A stretch of 64,000 nt of DNA from IMG/VR virus record IMGVR_UViG_3300036853_000446, positions 186,001 to 250,000 of that record; one strand, written 5' to 3'. Below are positions 4,308 to 49,175 of the stretch, in pieces. Under the pieces are notes generated by a model. The model saw only the letters and a list, made by a program, of their open reading frames with translations. It ran no database searches and was not told the DNA's origin. How positions within the stretch are numbered: position 1 is the first letter of the stretch; each line of letters begins with the position of its first letter. The position numbers were made by a program, and so were the translations under genes.

Positions 4308-4601
4308 GTGATGGGGTCCATCGTCGTCGTTCACCAACTCGAAGGTGGCTACCGCAGACGGTGGGTCTTCGAGTGGCACGGCCGAGACGTCGTCCTCTTG
4401 CGCTACCACCTCGAGCGTCGCGAGGGCAAAGGCCACCGACTCGTCGAATTCTTCGACGGCCAGGATGCCGGCGACTACGGCAACTGGAAATGGCTCGAGG
4501 AGTCCGAAGTGCCCTGGGACGAGGAGCTTCAGGGTGAGGTCGGACTGGCCATCATCAGCAGGCTACGGATCAGAAGGCCGAGCGAGAGCCGCGACGGCTA
4601 G
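4308..4601 (+). CDS. Hypothetical protein
   Basis: CGGTGTA at 4291-4297, 10 nt before the GTG. Confidence 0.65.
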   Translation: MMGSIVVVHQLEGGYRRRWVFEWHGRDVVLLRYHLERREGKGHRLVEFFDGQDAGDYGNWKWLEESEVPWDEELQGEVGLAIISRLRIRRPSESRDG

Positions 4602-4626
4602 AGTTCTTATCAAGGTCACCCATCGT

Positions 4627-5136
4627 ATGATCGACGCGCATGAAATAGTCCCGCTTCTCTGGCAAGGTTCAAAGCCCAAACCCGGGCGCGAGATAGCCGA
4701 TGCGGGCTTCGATGTCCTCGTGTTCTGCGCGCGAGATCACCAACCCTCGCCGGCCTCCTTCCCCGGGCTCGAGGTCATTCTCGCCCCGAACGATGATCAT
4801 ACTTTCCTCACGAAAGACGACTTGGCCGTGGCTGTCAGCACGGCGACTCGGGTGGCCAAGCGTCTCTTGTCGGGAAAAAAGATCCTCGTGACCTGTTACG
4901 CGGGGATCAACCGCTCCGGTCTCGTCGTCGCGCTGACGCTACACAAGGCCTTCGGCTACTCGGGACGGAGCTGCATCGAGCTGGTGAGGCAGCGTCGAAA
5001 GTTCGAAGATGGGGACGTGGCCCTCACCAACACGTTCTTTGTCGAGGCCTTGCTCAAACTACCGGGCCAAGATTTGGTCGTCACCCCAAATATTTGCATC
5101 TCGGATCACCGAGGTCACCGCGGGTTGATTGTGTGA
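4627..5136 (+). CDS. Dual-specificity/tyrosine phosphatase
   Basis: CX5R loop VTCYAGINRSG; EIVPLLWQGS N-terminus. Confidence 0.9.
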   Translation: MIDAHEIVPLLWQGSKPKPGREIADAGFDVLVFCARDHQPSPASFPGLEVILAPNDDHTFLTKDDLAVAVSTATRVAKRLLSGKKILVTCYAGINRSGLVVALTLHKAFGYSGRSCIELVRQRRKFEDGDVALTNTFFVEALLKLPGQDLVVTPNICISDHRGHRGLIV

Positions 5137-17371: not shown

Positions 17372-17655
17372 CCGTAACGCATCTCGAGACGACCCTCCGG
17401 TTCTACTTCGACCGCTGGTCGCGGCACTTTCCAGCCGAACGCATCGACACCGACGAGCTGTTCCCGGCGGGGGACCGTGACAAGGCGATGCGGCACGCGA
17501 TGTGGATGTGCGAGGTCTCCCTCGGCTTCATTCGCGACGGTCAAGCCGGCAAGGCAGACCGCTGGCTCGGCTTCGTTCAGGGGGTTCTATGGGCTTGTGG
17601 CCACTACACGATCGACGAGATGCGAGTCCACAGCACCGAACCCACCGAACCCTAG
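17368..17655 (+). CDS. Conserved phage hypothetical protein
   Basis: KADRWLGFVQGVL motif; ATGA coupling with the upstream gene. Confidence 0.75.
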   Translation: MTVTHLETTLRFYFDRWSRHFPAERIDTDELFPAGDRDKAMRHAMWMCEVSLGFIRDGQAGKADRWLGFVQGVLWACGHYTIDEMRVHSTEPTEP

Positions 17656-17945
17656 GTATCGCTCAGGCGCTCGACCATACGCACGTGGAGTTGATCCATC
17701 TTCGTCTGCAGCGAGGGCCCCGTACCGCGACGTTCTTCGCACTTGCGGTCCTCGCGGTGCGGGTGGTGCCATAACTCGAGCACGGGACGACCCATGCCCG
17801 CGATTACAATGAACGCTCCACAGTTTTCGCAGATGTACTTGGATTGACCGAGATCAAATCCGTGGACCATCGTGAATTTGTGACCAGCAGCTTCCAGGTC
17901 ATCCCAGTCGATTTCCTGAACTTCCTCTTCGGTTGTTTGCGCCAT
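17652..17945 (-). CDS. Small Zn-ribbon protein
   Basis: CENCG; GAGG RBS. Confidence 0.6.
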   Translation of the reverse strand: MAQTTEEEVQEIDWDDLEAAGHKFTMVHGFDLGQSKYICENCGAFIVIAGMGRPVLELWHHPHREDRKCEERRGTGPSLQTKMDQLHVRMVERLSDT

Positions 17946-18162
17946 GGGTGGCTGCCTCGCCGTATCGAGAGTGTTGAGAATCCTCTTGTGTGTCGGCTGG
18001 TTGGGGCCCGTCGGAAGCAGTCATGATGGGCGGCCGTCCCGACAACGACGGGCCCCACCAAATAACCTAGGAGAGACATCGCCGGATCGCAAGCAGCACG
18101 GTGCACCGAGCACGGTGAGGGGACGATCAGGGGGAGGCTCCGGCGCGGTGTATGAGAACGTT

Positions 18163-18313
18163 GCCCAGGCCGGGCGACTAGAGTCGTGGGAGAACCGCGG
18201 ACACGTTCAAATTTGCGTCATTGAACACGCCTGGCCTGGGCACCTCTCTTTAGGATGGCTGCACCAGCTCGTACCATCGCTTAGAATGCCCCTTCGGGGC
18301 TCCCGACGAGCTG
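18163..18313 (+). ncRNA. Candidate structured non-coding RNA
   Basis: 15-bp closing stem 18162-18176/18228-18242 enclosing three hairpins; second domain 18265-18272/18306-18313; CGGTGTA at 18146-18152. Confidence 0.5.
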
Positions 18314-18352
18314 CCTCTTGAGTTCCGTCTGTCGAGGGGCTACGAGAGAGCG

Positions 18353-18826
18353 ATGGGGTTTGTGGGCCGATTCGCCGCGTCATGGAAAACCGGCGCTCGA
18401 AAGCTCACCGCGGCAATCGTTATATTTGGGCTCGCATGCTCCATCGAGCAGCTCGTCTCTGGCCCGGTCACGTTGACGGGCGAGTGGACGACCGTGACAC
18501 CCCCCGAGCCGCTTCGAGTCGCCGGCAAAGGGCAACAGGTGGTCTGCCTGCAGGTCGTTGGCACACTGAGCGATGTTGACTTTAAGAGAGGCGCCGCGCT
18601 CGTCAACGGACAGTGGCACGTGCTCGCGGGAGAAGCCGTGGACGCCGAGCAGACGAACTACCCCCTCCAGGTCGGAGATCAGGGCGGCAACACAACCTGC
18701 TTATACCGTGCCGGGGAGCATCCTCCCGGGCCCGACTTTCCCGGGGATATCGTCAAACTCCGCCTTCGCAGCGAACCGCCGCTTCAGCTCGAGGGGATCC
18801 GGTGGCATTCCTACGATCAAAAATGA
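18353..18826 (+). CDS. Secreted/lipoprotein-like hypothetical protein
   Basis: Hydrophobic signal ending GLAC, followed by a beta-rich domain. Confidence 0.6.
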   Translation: MGFVGRFAASWKTGARKLTAAIVIFGLACSIEQLVSGPVTLTGEWTTVTPPEPLRVAGKGQQVVCLQVVGTLSDVDFKRGAALVNGQWHVLAGEAVDAEQTNYPLQVGDQGGNTTCLYRAGEHPPGPDFPGDIVKLRLRSEPPLQLEGIRWHSYDQK

Positions 18827-18838
18827 GGCAACAGACCC

Positions 18839-19462
18839 ATGCTCATATCCGTTAATACGCTGCGCCCCGCCGACATCATTGTCAGTACGACGGATGCTAC
18901 AATTTCCGCCGTCATTCGTGCGGGCACGGGGTCTTCGGTCAGCCATTCGATGATTTACGTCGGAGGCTCGGCCGTTATCGAGGCCATCGAGAGAGGGGTG
19001 CTCAGACGATCGCTCACGGACGCTTTCGACGATGCCGTCCTTGCGATCGCGCTACGTCGCCGCAACCTCACCGAGAAGCAGCGTGCCGACGTCATCAAGT
19101 ACGCAACCCAGTTCATGTTTAGACCTTATGACGTTCTTGGCGCCGTGGGCTCCGGCACCAAGACGGGCAGGGGTGGTTTTCTCGCGGGGTTCGGTTGCTC
19201 GATCAGTCTGATGTTCTGCGCGGCTGGAACGGCGGAAATACGCGAAAACGCCAAGCCCGAGAACGCGGACAAATCTTTCTTCTGCTCTGAGCTGGTCGCC
19301 CGATGCTTCGAGCTGGCGGGAGCGCCCGTGGTCGATGGCTTGCCTTCGTTCACCGCGCCGCGACACCTTCGAGTCGCGAACACGCTCTATTATTTGGGCA
19401 AGCTCGTGGATACCCCCGTCCCCGAGCAGGAGGACGGGATTGCTCTCGGGTCGCCGATGTAA
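18839..19462 (+). CDS. Permuted papain-like (YiiX/YebB, NlpC/P60) amidase
   Basis: LRPADII, SHSMIY (His) before FCSELV (Cys). Confidence 0.85.
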   Translation: MLISVNTLRPADIIVSTTDATISAVIRAGTGSSVSHSMIYVGGSAVIEAIERGVLRRSLTDAFDDAVLAIALRRRNLTEKQRADVIKYATQFMFRPYDVLGAVGSGTKTGRGGFLAGFGCSISLMFCAAGTAEIRENAKPENADKSFFCSELVARCFELAGAPVVDGLPSFTAPRHLRVANTLYYLGKLVDTPVPEQEDGIALGSPM

Positions 19463-22129: not shown

Positions 22130-23661
22130 TCAGTCGGTCCCTTTGATCGAGCACACGGGGTAGAGACGGTTCGCGACGCGCGCGATCCCGCACTGCTCGA
22201 GCACGGATAAAACCTCGTCGAGGTCCTTGTAAACGTGGGCGCACTCGTCGAGTGGGGTCTTCTTGTAATTGCCAACGATACCCTCGACCGTGACGCCCGC
22301 GAAGGTTCTTTTGACCGTCGCCATTTCGTTGTCGATGCGGGCCTGCTTGTGCTCAAATTTGTTCTTAGCCTTGCCCCGCGCCATGAGTCGGCCCGAGCCA
22401 TGATTCACGGAGCAGCCCGCGCCGTACGCCCCGGCGAGCGGGAACAGGATCGCGGCGCCCGTGTACATCGAGCCCGGGATGAGGCAGGGGTGGCCCGTGG
22501 TTTCCCATCGGGACCCCGCGAGGTCGGGATGCCCGGCGGGGAAGGCACGTGTCGCCCCTTTCCGATGGACGAAGCCCTTCTTCGTCGTGCCGTCGGGCAG
22601 CACCAGGGTTTCCTGCTGCACGAGGTTGTGACTGATCTCGTAGTAGACCTCGCCCTGGACGTCGAAGACTTCCTCGAGCGCCTCTTGAATCCCTTGCACG
22701 ATGATGTGCCGGTTGGCGATCGCGTAGTTGGCGGCCGAGTTGTGGTACGCCCAGTATTCCTTGCCGAGGGGCTCGTCGGCGCGAAGCCACGAGTCCTCGC
22801 GGCGCTTCATCGGGAGCCCACGGAGGCGGGCACCTTCGATGAAGAAATGATCGGCGATCTGGTGACCGTAACCGCGCGACCCGCAATGCACCATGACCCA
22901 GACCTCTCCCGTGTCACGGTCGCACTGAAGCTCGACGAAATGGTTACCCCCGCCGACGGACCGAGCTGAGGCAGGGCTCGTTTGCGTGCAGTCTCGACCT
23001 TGTCGAGGTCTAGCCCGTCTTGAATGGGTATGTACTGCCGCTCGCAAACGTCCGCCTTGACGCCCAGCGGCTTGGCGCCGTAGCGCAGGATCTCGTCGAG
23101 CTGCGTGTCGTTGAAAGTCTGCATCATCTCTACGCGGTGCGAGCCGACGCCGGTTGCGATGCGCTTCTCGACCTCGCTGATCCAGCGCCCGCGGCGCTCT
23201 TTGCTCTGGACCTTCTTTGCCGAAAGTCCGGGCACCTTTAGGGACAAGATCCCGCAGTTCACGTCGTACCCTGAGCCCGCCTGAATGAGCGTGTCGTCGG
23301 TGACGATCACGCTGCCCACCGGGACGCCAAAGCCAACATGAGTGTCAGGCATCAGGTACGCGCCAGTAACTCCTTCATAGGAAGCTCCGTTTGCGATCTG
23401 CTGCCAGAGCCCTTCGTCCGACGCCGCATAGAGCGCGTCCGACAAGAATGCGTGGACCTCGGTCTTCATCGAGGCCACCTTGGGCAGGACGTAGTGATTC
23501 TCGCCGGTCTTCACCGCGGTGTATTTGAAGGACATGAGCGCGCGAGGTGTATACTCCAAAGATTCGTGGACTACCACTGTCGGCGCCCGCTCCTCCTGAG
23601 TTTGGCGCCCCACGAATCGCTCGACCGCGTGTTTCGTAATGATCGGTTGGGAATCATGCAT
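22130..23661 (-). pseudogene. rtcB: RtcB RNA ligase split by a 1-nt frameshift near 22960
   Basis: MPDTHVGFGVPVG, GYDVNCG, GGGNHF, HCGSRG, HRKGATRA, NHGSGR, DECAHVYKD spread over two frames. Confidence 0.9.
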
Positions 23662-28359: not shown

Positions 28360-28408
28360 CAGAGGGCTAGGTCTCCTCGGTGTAGAGGCTATCGAGGAGA
28401 CCCAGCCC

Positions 28409-47345: not shown

Positions 47346-47397
47346 GTACCGGCAGCTGTAACACTTCCGGCTCGCCGGTTGTTACAGCTGCCGGTAC
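47346..47397. repeat. Perfect 18-bp inverted repeat
   Basis: gtaccggcagctgtaaca (47346-47363) / tgttacagctgccggtac (47380-47397). Confidence 0.9.
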
Positions 47398-47668: not shown

Positions 47669-47821
47669 GTGATCGGTCGTGCGGGGGAAGTCCCCACCCT
47701 CCACTCCCTGAGTACGGGTCGGAGGGGCAGCTTTGATCCTATGAAATTCAGATGGATCAAACCTGGGGCTTCAACTCGTACTCGAGGGAGTGGTGGGTGG
47801 GAACCGGTGTAGTGAGGGGGG

Positions 47822-48109: not shown

Positions 48110-48173
48110 ACTAGGGTTTTGCGCCGGAATGGGAGACTGAACGGCGCCGAATCCGCCTTCGGAGCGCATCGCG

Positions 48174-48395
48174 ATGGGCTTTTTCTCACGCTGGTTTGGG
48201 CCCCGTCCGGGCGGATCCGAGCGTCCCGAGCCCGTCGCAACCCTCCCAGCGCCGCCACCCGCGCCGTGGTGTCCGAGCTGCGGGCGCTCGGAAGGGGTTC
48301 TCAGCTCGACCCGGGATGCCTACGGGCGCTACTGCACTCGGTGTGGGCACGGGTGGCAGGTTGACGGCGTCGTTCCCGAGGGGCTCGAGCCGTGA
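48174..48395 (+). CDS. Zn-ribbon protein
   Basis: MGFFSRWFG; CPSC..CTRCG. Confidence 0.6.
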   Translation: MGFFSRWFGPRPGGSERPEPVATLPAPPPAPWCPSCGRSEGVLSSTRDAYGRYCTRCGHGWQVDGVVPEGLEP

Positions 48396-49069
48396 CGTCC
48401 GCGACGCGACACCCGAGCACCCCGCCGCTGACGCCCTGAGGGGCCTCCTCGAGCGCCCGCGGGCGTCGGGTGCACCGAGCGACGGGAGGGGCGCTCGGTG
48501 CCTGTAAACGGGCTGTGGGAGCCTCCGGGGCGATGGGCGCGGCGGAGGTCCCTTGGGCGCCCGCGTTTCTCTTGGGAATACGTCGCTTTCTGTAAAAACC
48601 GCGCCGTTGTTTCGTCTCGTGCCGGCCCATTTTAGGTTACTCTCACTCGTTTCGGCGCACGGGCGGGGTCATCTCGTTTCTGACTGAGACACCCAGCTCG
48701 GTGCCGCCGCCCTCAGCGAAGCTCGACTCCCCGGCAGCGAGCGGCTCAAAAGGTCCGCGCGCGCCCTTCCAAGATGGGAGTTAACGGCGCGCCACCAGAA
48801 AACAGCGGCGGATTGGATACTCTGGTCACCCCTCAGGTACCGCTTGTTAATGCGCTCCGGGCTCAGTCGTTTTCGATTGACATTCGACAAATAGCGCTCC
48901 CCCCGGCGCCCCTTCTTACTGGACGCGCAATCGGCCCAACGGCCATGAAAAGAATGAGCAAATCGGCCGGTCGAAACTGGCCTTAACGCAGCCCTAACTG
49001 AGACTTGGCCGACCCGCCGGTTTGATCATTCCTGCCTCCCCCCTCCGACCCGGCCTTCGGCCCTGGTCT

Positions 49070-49175
49070 TTAGGGTCGAGGCGTCGACCCTCCCGCTGTC
49101 TCGTTAGGGGTCGAGGCGTCGACCCTCCGGATCCCTGTCTTGAGCCGTCGCCGGCCTTAGGGTCGAGGCGTCGAC
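49070..49175. repeat. Three copies of palindromic unit TTAGGGTCGAGGCGTCGAC(CCTCC)
   Basis: 49070-49093, 49104-49128, 49157-49175. Confidence 0.85.

What the first reader, a model, noticed from the sequence alone, without database searches (positions are those of the whole stretch)
18146..18313. GGTGTA-driven structured ncRNA candidate with a tRNA-like acceptor end
Seen: CGGTGTA at 18146-18152 places +1 at G18163, exactly at the start of a 15-bp stem (tgcccaggccgggcg / cgcctggcctgggca, one G-U). The stem closes three hairpins (cgac-taga-gtcg, gtgg-gagaa-ccgc, gttcaa-N10-ttgaac). The 3' side reads GGGC-A-CC, like an acceptor stem plus discriminator, but there is no canonical T arm. A second domain follows (cagctcgt 18265-18272 / acgagctg 18306-18313 around a gcccc-ttcg-gggc hairpin). 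No credible ORF covers it. It could be a tRNA mimic or decoy, a Y-RNA-like RNA (RtcB is 4 kb away), or a new ribozyme.
Basis: partly seen in the sequence, partly recalled or inferred. Interest (0 to 1): 0.65.

Follow-up and report, generated by a model that had tools for sequence, protein, structure and literature searches.

The report
Conserved phage three-way-junction RNA, unannotated
The flagged stretch is a real, evolutionarily conserved folded RNA element shared by this soil jumbo phage and unrelated marine phages; it matches no catalogued RNA family, and its function is still unknown.

Summary
The first domain of the finding (window 18162-18242, + strand) is real and is not an orphan. 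It folds as a three-way junction. A 15-bp helix P1 closes a single-stranded ACUAGA joiner, a 7-bp hairpin P2 with a GAGAA loop, and a third hairpin P3.

A degenerate DNA pattern taken from it hit one marine phage contig, L185. The protein next to that hit led to about 20 further marine loci, and all of them carry the element at the same place. A covariance model built only from six marine copies (28-42% GC) finds 18161-18243(+) as the top hit in the 64-kb window: 44.4 bits, E = 2.6e-8, against 16.6 bits for the next hit. The same model finds nothing in 1.37 Mb of control DNA.

On the 7-sequence alignment, 15 of 21 pairs change on both sides. 86% of cells pair, against 29-45% when partners are slid. 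Rfam 15 has no match and ARAGORN finds no tRNA.

The tRNA-mimic and Y-RNA readings are not supported, and a ribozyme is untested. The CGGTGTA motif is a genuine gene-start/promoter-like signal of this phage, but this particular copy could be a chance occurrence. Function is unknown. My best guess is a stable, independently folding RNA module recognised by a conserved partner.

The parts
18146..18152 (+). CGGTGTA, this phage's gene-start/promoter-like motif. If active, it predicts an RNA 5' end at about 18163-18165.
   Evidence: GGTGTA occurs 32 times against 8.8 expected. 21 sites have an ATG 8-13 nt downstream, and 19 of those open coding-like ORFs. The same arrangement stands before the orthologous DUF5662 gene in relative L169, and also occurs in L004 and L005. 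This copy has no start codon after it and may be a chance occurrence.
18162..18176 (+). P1, 5' arm of the closing helix (14-15 bp)
   Evidence: MFE and pair probabilities of about 1.0. All 14 modelled pairs form, with letters entirely different from the marine copies.
18177..18182 (+). J1/2, single-stranded joiner ACUAGA (family consensus A-[C/A]-U-A-[G/A]-A)
   Evidence: Near-invariant across 7 sequences. It is not paired in the MFE.
18183..18202 (+). P2 hairpin: 7 bp with a bulged G18199 and the invariant GAGAA loop at 18190-18194
   Evidence: 4 of 7 pairs change on both sides in the family, and 94% of cells pair.
18203..18227 (+). J2/3 (AC), P3 hairpin GUUCAA-N10-UUGAAC, and J3/1 (A). The invariants are GUC in the loop and UGAACAC at the 3' end.
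   Evidence: P3 is shorter here than in the marine copies. Its arms are conserved in sequence, so covariation cannot test them.
18228..18242 (+). P1, 3' arm
18243..18254 (+). CU-rich tail CCUCUCUUUAGG after P1. It may be a weak terminator tail and/or a partner for the GAGAA loop. Marine copies carry a UYCCUUUC hairpin loop 5' of the junction instead.
   Evidence: Terminator-like flag and sequence. The link between the two is inference only.
18265..18313 (+). Second hairpin domain of the finding. Possibly the end of the transcript. It is not part of the conserved family.
   Evidence: Folds. Only sequence is shared with L009, and neither the outer stem nor the GCCCC/GGGGC hairpin is kept there. 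Homology to the cassette starts at 18269 in L009 and at 18304 in L005.
18318..18346 (+). Sigma-70-like promoter of the downstream gene: TTGAGT (18318-18323), a 17-nt spacer, TACGAG (18341-18346), then 6 nt to the ATG at 18353 (a leaderless layout). This belongs to the cassette, not to the RNA.
   Evidence: CTTGAGT-17-TAnnnn-6/7-ATG is shared by about 12 homologous loci.

Best explanation
Window 18162-18242 (+) encodes one copy of a conserved phage RNA structure that is absent from Rfam 15.

Anatomy: a long helix P1 (14-15 bp) joins the two ends. It closes a three-way junction made of an invariant unpaired joiner A-[C/A]-U-A-[G/A]-A, a 7-bp hairpin P2 capped by an invariant GAGAA loop, and a third arm P3 that ends in invariant UGAAC-A. 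The same module lies in the 3' untranslated region of an ATPase/475-aa operon in marine phage contigs of up to about 43 kb.

Shown: the fold, the family, the covariation and a modest lean to the + strand.

Inferred for this jumbo phage:
- The module is transcribed on its own from the CGGTGTA motif 10 nt upstream.
- The transcript is either about 85-90 nt, ending in the CU-rich tail, or about 155 nt, ending at the second hairpin just before the next gene's promoter.
- P1 hides both ends from exonucleases and from 5'-end-dependent decay.
- The roughly 20 invariant unpaired nucleotides form a surface read by a partner common to very different phage-host pairs, most likely a protein.

On this reading it is a stable, trans-acting RNA module rather than a regulator of one particular gene.

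Rough odds: real conserved RNA structure, about 0.9; independent promoter-driven transcript here, about 0.5; protein-binding trans-acting role, about 0.3.
For: Fold stability and strand asymmetry.

Discovery of a homolog through a pattern that left the P2 stem letters free.

Model R1, built from the window alone, finds the element at the same syntenic spot in marine loci that were fetched through a protein, not through the pattern. L204 scores 28.9 bits (E = 4e-4) and L194-L203 score 22.5 bits.

The reciprocal model R2, built from marine copies only, finds 18161-18243(+) at 44.4 bits, E = 2.6e-8, full length. The next hit is 16.6 bits and the minus strand of this locus is not listed.

There are 0 hits in 1.37 Mb of unrelated loci.

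Covariation: 15 of 21 pairs change on both sides; 86% of cells pair against 29-45% when slid; 0 of 500 shuffles reach the observed values. RNAalifold on the marine sequences alone recovers P1 and P2.

No protein gene is shared between the marine loci and the window, so the RNA is conserved independently of its neighbours.

The marine 5' domain is absent from the window. This fits a 5' end near P1 and the promoter-like motif.

No Rfam family matches.
Against: There are no transcript data.

The alignment used for pair counts was fitted to the model. It holds only 7 sequences in about 5 lineages.

The strand signal in the family is modest: 127 of 147 cells pair on the given strand against 120 on the opposite strand.

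The CGGTGTA copy may be chance, because unlinked sites number about what chance predicts.

In marine phages the element sits inside an mRNA 3' UTR, which suits a cis role as well as a trans one.

The edge of contig L009 looks like the 3' end of another copy in front of the same cassette. That would tie the RNA to the cassette. However L005, 76% identical across the cassette, lacks the element.

No partner has been identified.
Confidence: 0.6

Rival explanations
1. It is a cis-acting element at the border of a transcription unit. The module would protect or process the mRNA it is attached to: the 3' UTR in marine phages, and here the 5' leader of the lipoprotein/amidase cassette. It would act as an exonuclease block, a 5'-end stabiliser or an RNase processing site.
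For: In all marine loci it starts just after a stop codon, on the same strand, ahead of a hairpin and the next promoter. Here P1 begins at the predicted +1, so no 5' overhang is left. The edge of L009 suggests a second copy before the same cassette. The long-leader fold pairs the CU tract with the GAGAGAG just before the ATG.
Against: A plain stabiliser needs no invariant junction and loop nucleotides across 28-62% GC genomes. The flanking genes are unrelated between the window and the marine phages. The cassette has its own conserved promoter. L005 keeps the cassette without the RNA.
Confidence: 0.25
2. It is a new small self-cleaving ribozyme, or another catalytic or ligand-binding RNA. The conserved junction nucleotides would form an active site or a binding pocket.
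For: About 20 invariant, mostly unpaired nucleotides are held by covarying helices. That pattern is typical of ribozymes and aptamers. Marine copies add a domain with a GNRA tetraloop that could dock on a helix. No known family matches.
Against: There is no match to any ribozyme or riboswitch model in Rfam 15. The hammerhead core motifs are absent by inspection. The downstream genes are not conserved, which argues against a riboswitch. Nothing here tests catalysis.
Confidence: 0.1
3. It is a tRNA mimic or decoy. P1 would imitate the stacked acceptor/T helix, with an A-CC 3' end that could be matured to CCA, for RNase P, the CCA-adding enzyme, RtcB or a tRNA-targeting defence nuclease.
For: 'ACC' directly follows P1 in the window, L185 (UACCU) and L194 (UACCA). 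P1 is 12-15 bp long. UAGAG and GUUCAAAU recall D-arm and T-loop sequences (my own knowledge, as a lead only). RtcB lies about 4 kb away.
Against: ARAGORN finds nothing at 80-100% thresholds, and at 70% gives only junk that ignores the real helices. There is no Rfam tRNA or tmRNA hit. L186, L188 and L204 lack ACC. The GUUCAAAU string is not conserved in most marine copies. There is no D stem, and P2 has a 5-nt loop.
Confidence: 0.06
4. It is a Y-RNA-like RNA that tethers a Ro60 (Rsr) protein, linked to the nearby RtcB.
For: Size and the end-to-end helix fit Y RNAs, which are 80-130 nt with a long stem (PMC4201824). Phage Y RNAs exist (same paper).
Against: There is no Rfam hit even at E = 10. 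No TROVE domain is found among the 20 ORFs scanned against Pfam, which include every ORF of about 350 aa or more in my rough gene map. There are no T-arm or D-arm mimics. The marine copies were fetched with no Ro60 or RtcB neighbour.
Confidence: 0.02
5. It is a DNA-level element, for example a single-strand initiation or origin structure, or a protein-binding palindrome, rather than an RNA.
For: G-T wobble is also tolerated in single-stranded DNA. The family's strand asymmetry is modest. In marine copies the opposite strand of the conserved P3 block reads TTCACTATAGG, like the core of a T7-type promoter (the resemblance is from my own knowledge). The marine copies lie among DNA-metabolism genes.
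Against: The fold z-scores favour the + strand strongly in the window. R2 does not list the minus strand. All marine copies are co-oriented with their genes. The T7-like block is absent from the window copy and occurs once per locus.
Confidence: 0.05

Closest known systems
Bacterial and phage Y RNAs (YrlA/Yrn1; Chen et al. 2014, PMC4201824)
   Same: About 80-130 nt, with the 5' and 3' ends joined in a long helix that closes a branched or looped module. They are encoded in phages as well as bacteria and are thought to act by binding a protein.
   Different: No Rfam match, no Ro60 gene found, and no T-arm or D-arm mimic. The conserved nucleotides (ACUAGA, GAGAA, UGAACAC) are unrelated to the Ro60-binding helix.
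phi29-type packaging RNA (pRNA) (from my own knowledge; its Rfam family gave no hit)
   Same: A phage-encoded RNA built on a three-way junction, with a long helix formed by the 5' and 3' ends and two hairpin arms whose loops are functional.
   Different: No sequence or model match. The host phages are a 407-kb jumbo phage and marine contigs of up to about 43 kb, not phi29-like phages. No complementary loop pair is evident.
tRNA-like structures (tmRNA tRNA-like domain, viral 3' tRNA-like structures, mascRNA)
   Same: A long terminal helix followed in some members by A-CC. In marine phages it sits at the 3' end of an mRNA, where a tRNA-like fold could direct processing.
   Different: No cloverleaf, no T-loop and no D-arm. 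ARAGORN and Rfam are negative. The ACC is not conserved family-wide.
Candidate structured RNAs predicted in bulk from IMG/VR (Fremin, Bhatt & Kyrpides 2023, PMC10690425)
   Same: The same kind of object: a covarying intergenic RNA motif in uncultivated phages with no assigned function. The window's contig is an IMG/VR entry.
   Different: I could not check whether this motif is among their 10,006 candidates, because no supplementary files are held. It is not in Rfam 15.
Three-way-junction riboswitch aptamers (purine class and similar)
   Same: A P1-P2-P3 junction with conserved joiners, and helices that covary.
   Different: P1 is very long and stable. The downstream genes differ between members. 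No Rfam riboswitch matches: the only weak hit, Guanidine-III at 16.9 bits against a 36-bit cut-off, lies in the second domain and the promoter region.

Membership tests
The new three-way-junction phage RNA motif (defined here from marine loci L185-L204) | Significant full-length match to a covariance model built without the candidate | tested here: met
   R2 (marine copies only) against the window: 18161-18243(+) at 44.4 bits, E = 2.6e-8, model positions 1-102 of 102. Controls of 1.37 Mb gave 0 hits.
The new three-way-junction phage RNA motif | Long closing helix P1 whose letters covary | tested here: met
   All 14 modelled pairs form in the window. 11 of 14 P1 pairs change on both sides across the family.
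The new three-way-junction phage RNA motif | Invariant joiner A-[C/A]-U-A-[G/A]-A, GAGAA-capped P2, and 3' UGAACAC | tested here: met
   ACUAGA at 18177-18182, GAGAA at 18190-18194, and UGAACAC at 18222-18228, running one base into P1.
The new three-way-junction phage RNA motif | 5' Y-shaped domain (GNRA hairpin plus UYCCUUUC-loop hairpin) seen in marine members | tested here: not met
   R3 against the whole window gave no hit at E <= 10. This domain is therefore accessory, or the window copy is a short form.
tRNA / tRNA-like | Cloverleaf with D, anticodon and T arms | tested here: not met
   ARAGORN finds 0 genes, still 0 at 80% thresholds, and only inconsistent junk at 70%. The fold is a three-way junction.
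tRNA / tRNA-like | Discriminator plus CCA at the 3' end of the terminal helix | tested here: inconclusive
   A-CC-U here, UACCU in L185 and UACCA in L194, but absent in L186, L188 and L204. The mature ends are unknown.
Y RNA (YrlA type) | Encoded next to a Ro60/TROVE gene | tested here: not met
   Pfam scans of 20 window ORFs, which include every ORF of about 350 aa or more in my rough gene map, show no TROVE domain. The rest of the 407-kb genome was not seen.
Y RNA (YrlA type) | Match to the family model / T-arm-like stem-loop | tested here: not met
   No Rfam hit at gathering score or at E <= 10.
Known self-cleaving ribozymes (classes held in Rfam 15) | Match to a family model | tested here: not met
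Self-cleaving ribozyme (any, including a new class) | Site-specific self-cleavage | not testable with these tools
   Needs in-vitro transcription and a cleavage assay.
Guanidine-III riboswitch | Score at or above the Rfam gathering cut-off; guanidine-related downstream gene | tested here: not met
   16.9 bits against 36 at 18283-18343, overlapping the promoter. The ACGAG is not kept in L009. The downstream gene is a lipoprotein-like protein with no Pfam domain.
Intrinsic terminator | GC-rich stem with a short loop followed by a U-tract | tested here: inconclusive
   The window tail CCUCUCUUU was flagged only through a 5-bp sub-hairpin. The 'loop' of P1 is 51 nt, and the marine copies have no U-tract after P1.

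The most novel reading that the evidence does not exclude
The module is a new class of catalytic or processing RNA carried by very different phages, from marine phage contigs to a 407-kb soil jumbo phage. It could be a self-cleaving ribozyme, or a tRNA-like signal cut by RNase P and extended with CCA. It would define transcript ends or act as a decoy for host RNA-targeting defences.
Probability: 0.12. Interest if true: 0.85.

Novelty: new member of a known kind. Interest (0 to 1): 0.6.

Why it matters
Phage intergenic 'dark matter' is rarely assigned. This element is conserved in structure, and in about 20 invariant nucleotides, between phages that share no detectable protein gene in the fetched regions. 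Those phages differ twofold in GC content and come from soil and ocean. Conservation that is independent of context points to a partner or chemistry common to many phage-host systems.

The marine host protein family has 344 detected members, so the RNA is probably abundant in ocean viromes yet is missing from Rfam 15. That makes it a concrete, cheaply testable target for transcript mapping, probing, cleavage assays and pull-downs.

The work also yields a promoter-like motif (CGGTGTA, then 9-12 nt, then ATG) that helps annotate gene starts in this jumbo-phage lineage.

Tried and rejected
1. Rfam at gathering score on the whole window gave nothing. E-value mode on 17900-18500 and 18150-18260 gave only a sub-threshold Guanidine-III hit and generic miRNA-hairpin hits.

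2. ARAGORN at default and relaxed thresholds gave no tRNA or tmRNA.

3. BLAST of the region against GenBank phages and plasmids gave no match. The L185 RNA region against phages gave only AT-rich noise.

4. Synteny through the downstream 157-aa gene covered 86 homologs, 12 metagenome loci and further contigs. The promoter is conserved but domain 1 is absent, and L005's upstream region is not unusually structured.

5. Synteny through the upstream 97-aa gene showed that relatives have no gap there.

6. Exact and degenerate DNA scans:
   - The 14-mer of P1 gave only chance hits.
   - The 22-mer of P3 found only the window itself.
   - The loop-based pattern gave 1 viral and 27 genome hits, all without the structure.
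   - The P3-stem pattern gave 10 hits without the structure.
   - Only the J1/2-P2 pattern succeeded.

7. No paralog exists in the window.

8. A target search for the P3 loop complement found nothing above chance.

10. My own early idea that UAUGAGAA upstream of P1 is homologous to L185's UAUUAGAA was dropped once L186 and L188 showed a 14-15-bp P1 like the window's.

11. I noted a resemblance of P2 and its flanks, plus the CU tract, to the 3' end of 16S rRNA, and resemblances to hairpin-ribozyme loop motifs. Both come from memory, could not be mapped consistently, and are kept only as leads.

12. Supplementary data of Fremin et al. 2023 are not held.

Full report
WHERE WE ARE. The window is part of IMGVR_UViG_3300036853_000446, a 407,634-bp phage contig of about 61% GC. 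The finding lies in a 407-nt non-coding gap at 17946-18352. On one side is a 97-aa zinc-ribbon-like gene on the minus strand (17652-17945). On the other is a 157-aa lipoprotein-like gene (18353-18826) followed by a C92/YiiX-type amidase (18839-19462), both on the plus strand. The only ORF across the region, 17944-18321, has non-coding codon-position GC (.67/.59/.61, against about .64/.45/.75 in real genes).

THE OBSERVATION. The letters and coordinates are right. ViennaRNA folds 18162-18242 as a 15-bp helix P1 with one G-U pair. P1 closes a three-way junction:
- a six-base unpaired joiner, ACUAGA;
- hairpin P2 (18183-18202), 7 bp with a bulged G and a GAGAA loop;
- hairpin P3 (18205-18226), 6 bp with a 10-nt loop.

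It costs 6.6-8.5 kcal/mol and has pair probability of at most 0.02. The fold is therefore not a cloverleaf.

The structure is unusual for this DNA:
- The 161-nt fold has z = -3.5 on + and -1.6 on -.
- The whole gap has z = -3.9 on + and -0.6 on -.
- In a scan of 1598 windows over both strands, 18161(+) has z = -5.0 and ranks 7th, behind a few plain hairpins.

THE GGTGTA MOTIF. GGTGTA occurs 32 times against 8.8 +/- 3.1 expected. 21 sites have an ATG 8-13 nt downstream, usually with a C before the motif. 19 of those ATGs open coding-like ORFs, including the true start of RtcB and the start of the DUF5662 gene. Two more sites precede GTG starts. Three have longer leaders; the two read in full (28379 and 40116) carry a Shine-Dalgarno sequence. 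The same motif and spacing precede the DUF5662 ortholog in relative L169, and genes in L004 and L005.

The motif is therefore a lineage-specific gene-start signal. It is best read as a promoter element for leaderless or short-leader mRNAs. That reading is an inference, because no transcript data exist.

The remaining 8-9 unlinked sites equal the chance expectation, so the copy at 18146 cannot be called functional from counts alone. In its favour are the C at -1, its intergenic position, and its spacing, which puts +1 at the first pairs of P1.

THE DOWNSTREAM GENE HAS ITS OWN PROMOTER. About a dozen homologous loci share CTTGAGT, 17 nt, TAnnnn, 6-7 nt, ATG. Here that is 18318-18346. The 157-aa plus C92 pair is a two-gene cassette found in many soil contigs, some next to IS66 genes, and in a Polyangiaceae MAG. 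Homology to the cassette begins at window 18304 in L005 and at about 18269 in L009.

The finding's second domain (18265-18313) therefore straddles the cassette border. In L009 only its sequence is conserved. Its outer stem and its GCCCC/GGGGC hairpin are not.

FIRST ROUND OF HOMOLOG SEARCHES: NOTHING. The following all failed for domain 1: Rfam, ARAGORN, BLAST, synteny through both neighbouring genes, and several exact or degenerate DNA scans. At that stage it looked like an orphan.

THE BREAK. A pattern was written that fixed only the joiner, the base of P2 and the GAGAA loop, and left the P2 stem letters free. It hit one other viral contig, L185 (IMGVR_UViG_3300032087_001682, about 44% GC). 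Beyond the forced letters, L185 shows three things:
- complementary free positions, GUAG/CUAC where the window has GUGG/CCGC;
- the same bulged G;
- a closing helix at the same junction positions made of different letters, and the same UGAACAC before the 3' arm.

The 473-aa protein just upstream in L185 has 344 detected homologs, largely in marine metagenomes. Fetching four of them gave L186-L204. All carry a 285-655-nt non-protein-coding gap after that gene; in the L194 type a gene call on the opposite strand (131 aa) fills part of it and overlaps the element's 3' end.

TESTS OF HOMOLOGY.
(a) Model R1, built from the window sequence alone, finds the element at the syntenic spot in loci that were chosen through a protein, not through the pattern. 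L204 scores 28.9 bits (E = 4e-4) and L194-L203 score 22.5 bits (E = 0.011).
(b) Model R2 was built only from six marine copies (28-42% GC; P1 14 bp plus P2 7 bp). Run with filters off over both strands of the 64-kb window, it gives 18161-18243(+) as the top hit at 44.4 bits, E = 2.6e-8, full length. The next hit is a plain hairpin at 16.6 bits.
(d) On the 7-sequence alignment A6, 86% of cells pair against 29-45% when the 3' partners are slid. 15 of 21 pairs change on both sides. The covariation score is 0.69 against 0.05-0.16 when slid, and 0 of 500 shuffles reach any observed measure.
(e) RNAalifold on the marine sequences alone, not fitted to my structure, recovers P1 and P2 with compensatory changes.

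Caveats: A6 is fitted to the model, and there are only about five independent lineages. The window copy is 40-58% identical to the others, yet forms every P1 pair.

FAMILY ANATOMY.
- P1 is 12-15 bp and covaries.
- The joiner is A-[C/A]-U-A-[G/A]-A.
- P2 is GU.NNRG / CYNN..AC with a bulge, capped by invariant GAGAAC.
- Then comes A.A.G.
- The third arm has invariant GUC and ends in invariant UGAACAC. Its UUCA/UGAA pairing is conserved in sequence, so covariation cannot test it.
- Marine copies have a longer third arm.
- Marine copies also have an extra 5' Y-shaped domain: a stem, a GNRA hairpin, and a hairpin with a UYCCUUUC loop. This domain covaries too. It is not detectable anywhere in the window (R3).

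The window instead has a CU-rich tract, CCUCUCUUUAGG, just 3' of P1. Whether that tract is a permuted counterpart able to pair with GAGA of the P2 loop is speculation.

'ACC' follows P1 in the window, L185 and L194, but not in L186, L188 or L204.

The given strand pairs slightly better than its complement: 127 against 120 of 147 cells, with 12 G-U cells against 5 A-C cells. All marine copies are co-oriented with their genes.

CONTEXT. In marine phages the order is: AAA_5 ATPase (PHROG 'porphyrin biosynthesis'/ATPase), then a 475-aa protein of unknown function, then the RNA, then (in the L185, L186 and L188 types) a hairpin and an AT-rich promoter-like stretch by my reading, then a 77-85-aa protein, then an SbcD-like exonuclease. 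There the RNA lies in an mRNA 3' UTR.

In the window the gene upstream points the other way. The RNA therefore needs its own promoter, and it is followed by a hairpin (domain 2) and then the next promoter. That is the same layout. No protein gene is shared between the marine loci and the window. The first 28 bases of contig L009 align with the 3' end of the window element (UGAGCGC... against UGAACAC..., then a G/C-rich arm and a CU-rich tract) in front of the same cassette. This is suggestive only, because the contig ends there.

WHAT IT IS NOT.
- It is not a tRNA.
- It does not match Rfam's Y RNA models, and no Ro60/TROVE protein is found among the 20 ORFs scanned, which include every ORF of about 350 aa or more in my rough gene map. 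Y RNA criteria are from PMC4201824.
- It is not a Guanidine-III riboswitch: 16.9 bits against a 36-bit cut-off, in the wrong place.
- It matches no known ribozyme model.
- RtcB, 4 kb away, is real but appears split by a frameshift. Nothing links it to the RNA.

MECHANISM (inference). Helices that covary while about 20 unpaired nucleotides stay invariant across 28-62% GC genomes indicate a specific tertiary fold or a recognition surface. The independence from neighbouring genes favours a self-contained module read by a partner common to many phage-host pairs. The long P1 would protect both ends.

I put about 0.35 on a trans-acting, partner-binding stable RNA, about 0.25 on a cis-acting transcript-border element, and about 0.1 on a new ribozyme or aptamer. 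I put about 0.06 on a tRNA-like processing or decoy signal, about 0.05 on a DNA-level element and about 0.02 on a Y RNA. The rest is for something not listed.

NOVELTY. No Rfam 15 family matches the window or the marine copies. Bulk predictions from IMG/VR exist (PMC10690425), and this motif may be among them. I could not check, because no supplements are held. I file it as a new family within a known kind of object: covarying phage ncRNA motifs of unknown function.

Noticed in passing
window-wide, e.g. 16648, 35833, 47806, 59086 (+); 2476, 31611, 42595 (-): CGGTGTA followed 9-12 nt later by ATG or GTG marks about 21 gene starts with no Shine-Dalgarno sequence (leaderless-like). Two sites with 24-29-nt leaders (28379 and 40116) do carry GGAGG/GAGGAG, and the 39528 site reaches a 42-aa ORF through a 12-aa ORF. 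The motif is conserved before orthologous genes in relatives (L169, L004, L005). It is probably the promoter element of a phage-specific transcription programme.
   Followed up: partly
window 22130-23661 (-): RtcB is split into two overlapping ORFs in different frames. 23661-22807 matches Pfam RtcB positions 1-116. 23047-22130 matches positions 144-426. This is a frameshift, a sequencing error or programmed recoding near the QLG/GGGNHF region.
   Followed up: partly
window 18318-19462; loci L005-L017, L138-L140: The 157-aa lipoprotein-like gene plus the C92 (YiiX-type) amidase form a two-gene cassette with its own sigma-70-like, leaderless-type promoter. The cassette is shared with many soil contigs and a Polyangiaceae MAG, sometimes beside IS66 genes. 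It looks like a moron acquired from, or exchanged with, Myxococcota-type hosts.
   Followed up: partly
window 18003-18057: A second strong hairpin in the same gap: an 11-bp perfect stem GGGGCCCGUCG/CGACGGGCCCC around an inner hairpin. z = -3.05 on + and -0.55 on -. A weak sigma-70-like promoter on the minus strand (TTGCGA-17-TAGGTT, 18092-18064) would start the 97-aa gene's mRNA right at this hairpin.
   Followed up: no
window 47690-47805, 47346-47397, 28364-28408: The most stable local structures of the window are long GC-rich hairpins without U-tracts (z down to -9.7). One directly precedes a CGGTGTA-N10-ATG gene start. Another holds GGTGTA in its loop, and its 3' arm supplies the next gene's Shine-Dalgarno sequence. 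They may be terminator-promoter modules or RNase III sites.
   Followed up: no
window 48110-49156, repeats at 49072-49175: About 1 kb has no convincing gene and holds three copies of the palindromic unit GGGTCGAGGCGTCGACCCT. Tandem Repeats Finder reports nothing there.
   Followed up: partly
window 4801-4920 (+): A strongly structured stretch (z = -5.7 on + and -3.0 on -) lies within or beside ORF 4345-5136, whose codon-position GC is atypical.
   Followed up: no
L186:3061-3071 and the same place in all marine copies: The opposite strand of the conserved third-arm block reads TTCACTATAGG, identical to the core of T7-type promoters (from my own knowledge). It occurs once per locus and is absent from the window copy.
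   Followed up: partly
L009:1-28: The contig edge aligns with the 3' end of the window RNA (UGAGCGC plus a G/C-rich arm plus a CU-rich tract) upstream of the same cassette. It may be a truncated second GC-rich copy. The non-coding stretch there is 79% identical to the window, while the protein is only 58% identical.
   Followed up: partly
L194:3060-3455 (-): In one marine lineage a 131-aa minus-strand gene with no family hit is called right after the RNA, overlapping its 3' end by about 13 nt. In the window a foreign cassette follows the RNA. The site just 3' of the element may be an insertion hot spot.
   Followed up: no
window 17652-17945 (-): The 97-aa protein has no hit in the word-indexed search but has 35 remote homologs of about 90 aa in the exhaustive search. 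In relatives it is convergent with the DUF5662 gene (L169) and sits inside an operon, so the gap and cassette upstream of it are specific to this phage.
   Followed up: yes
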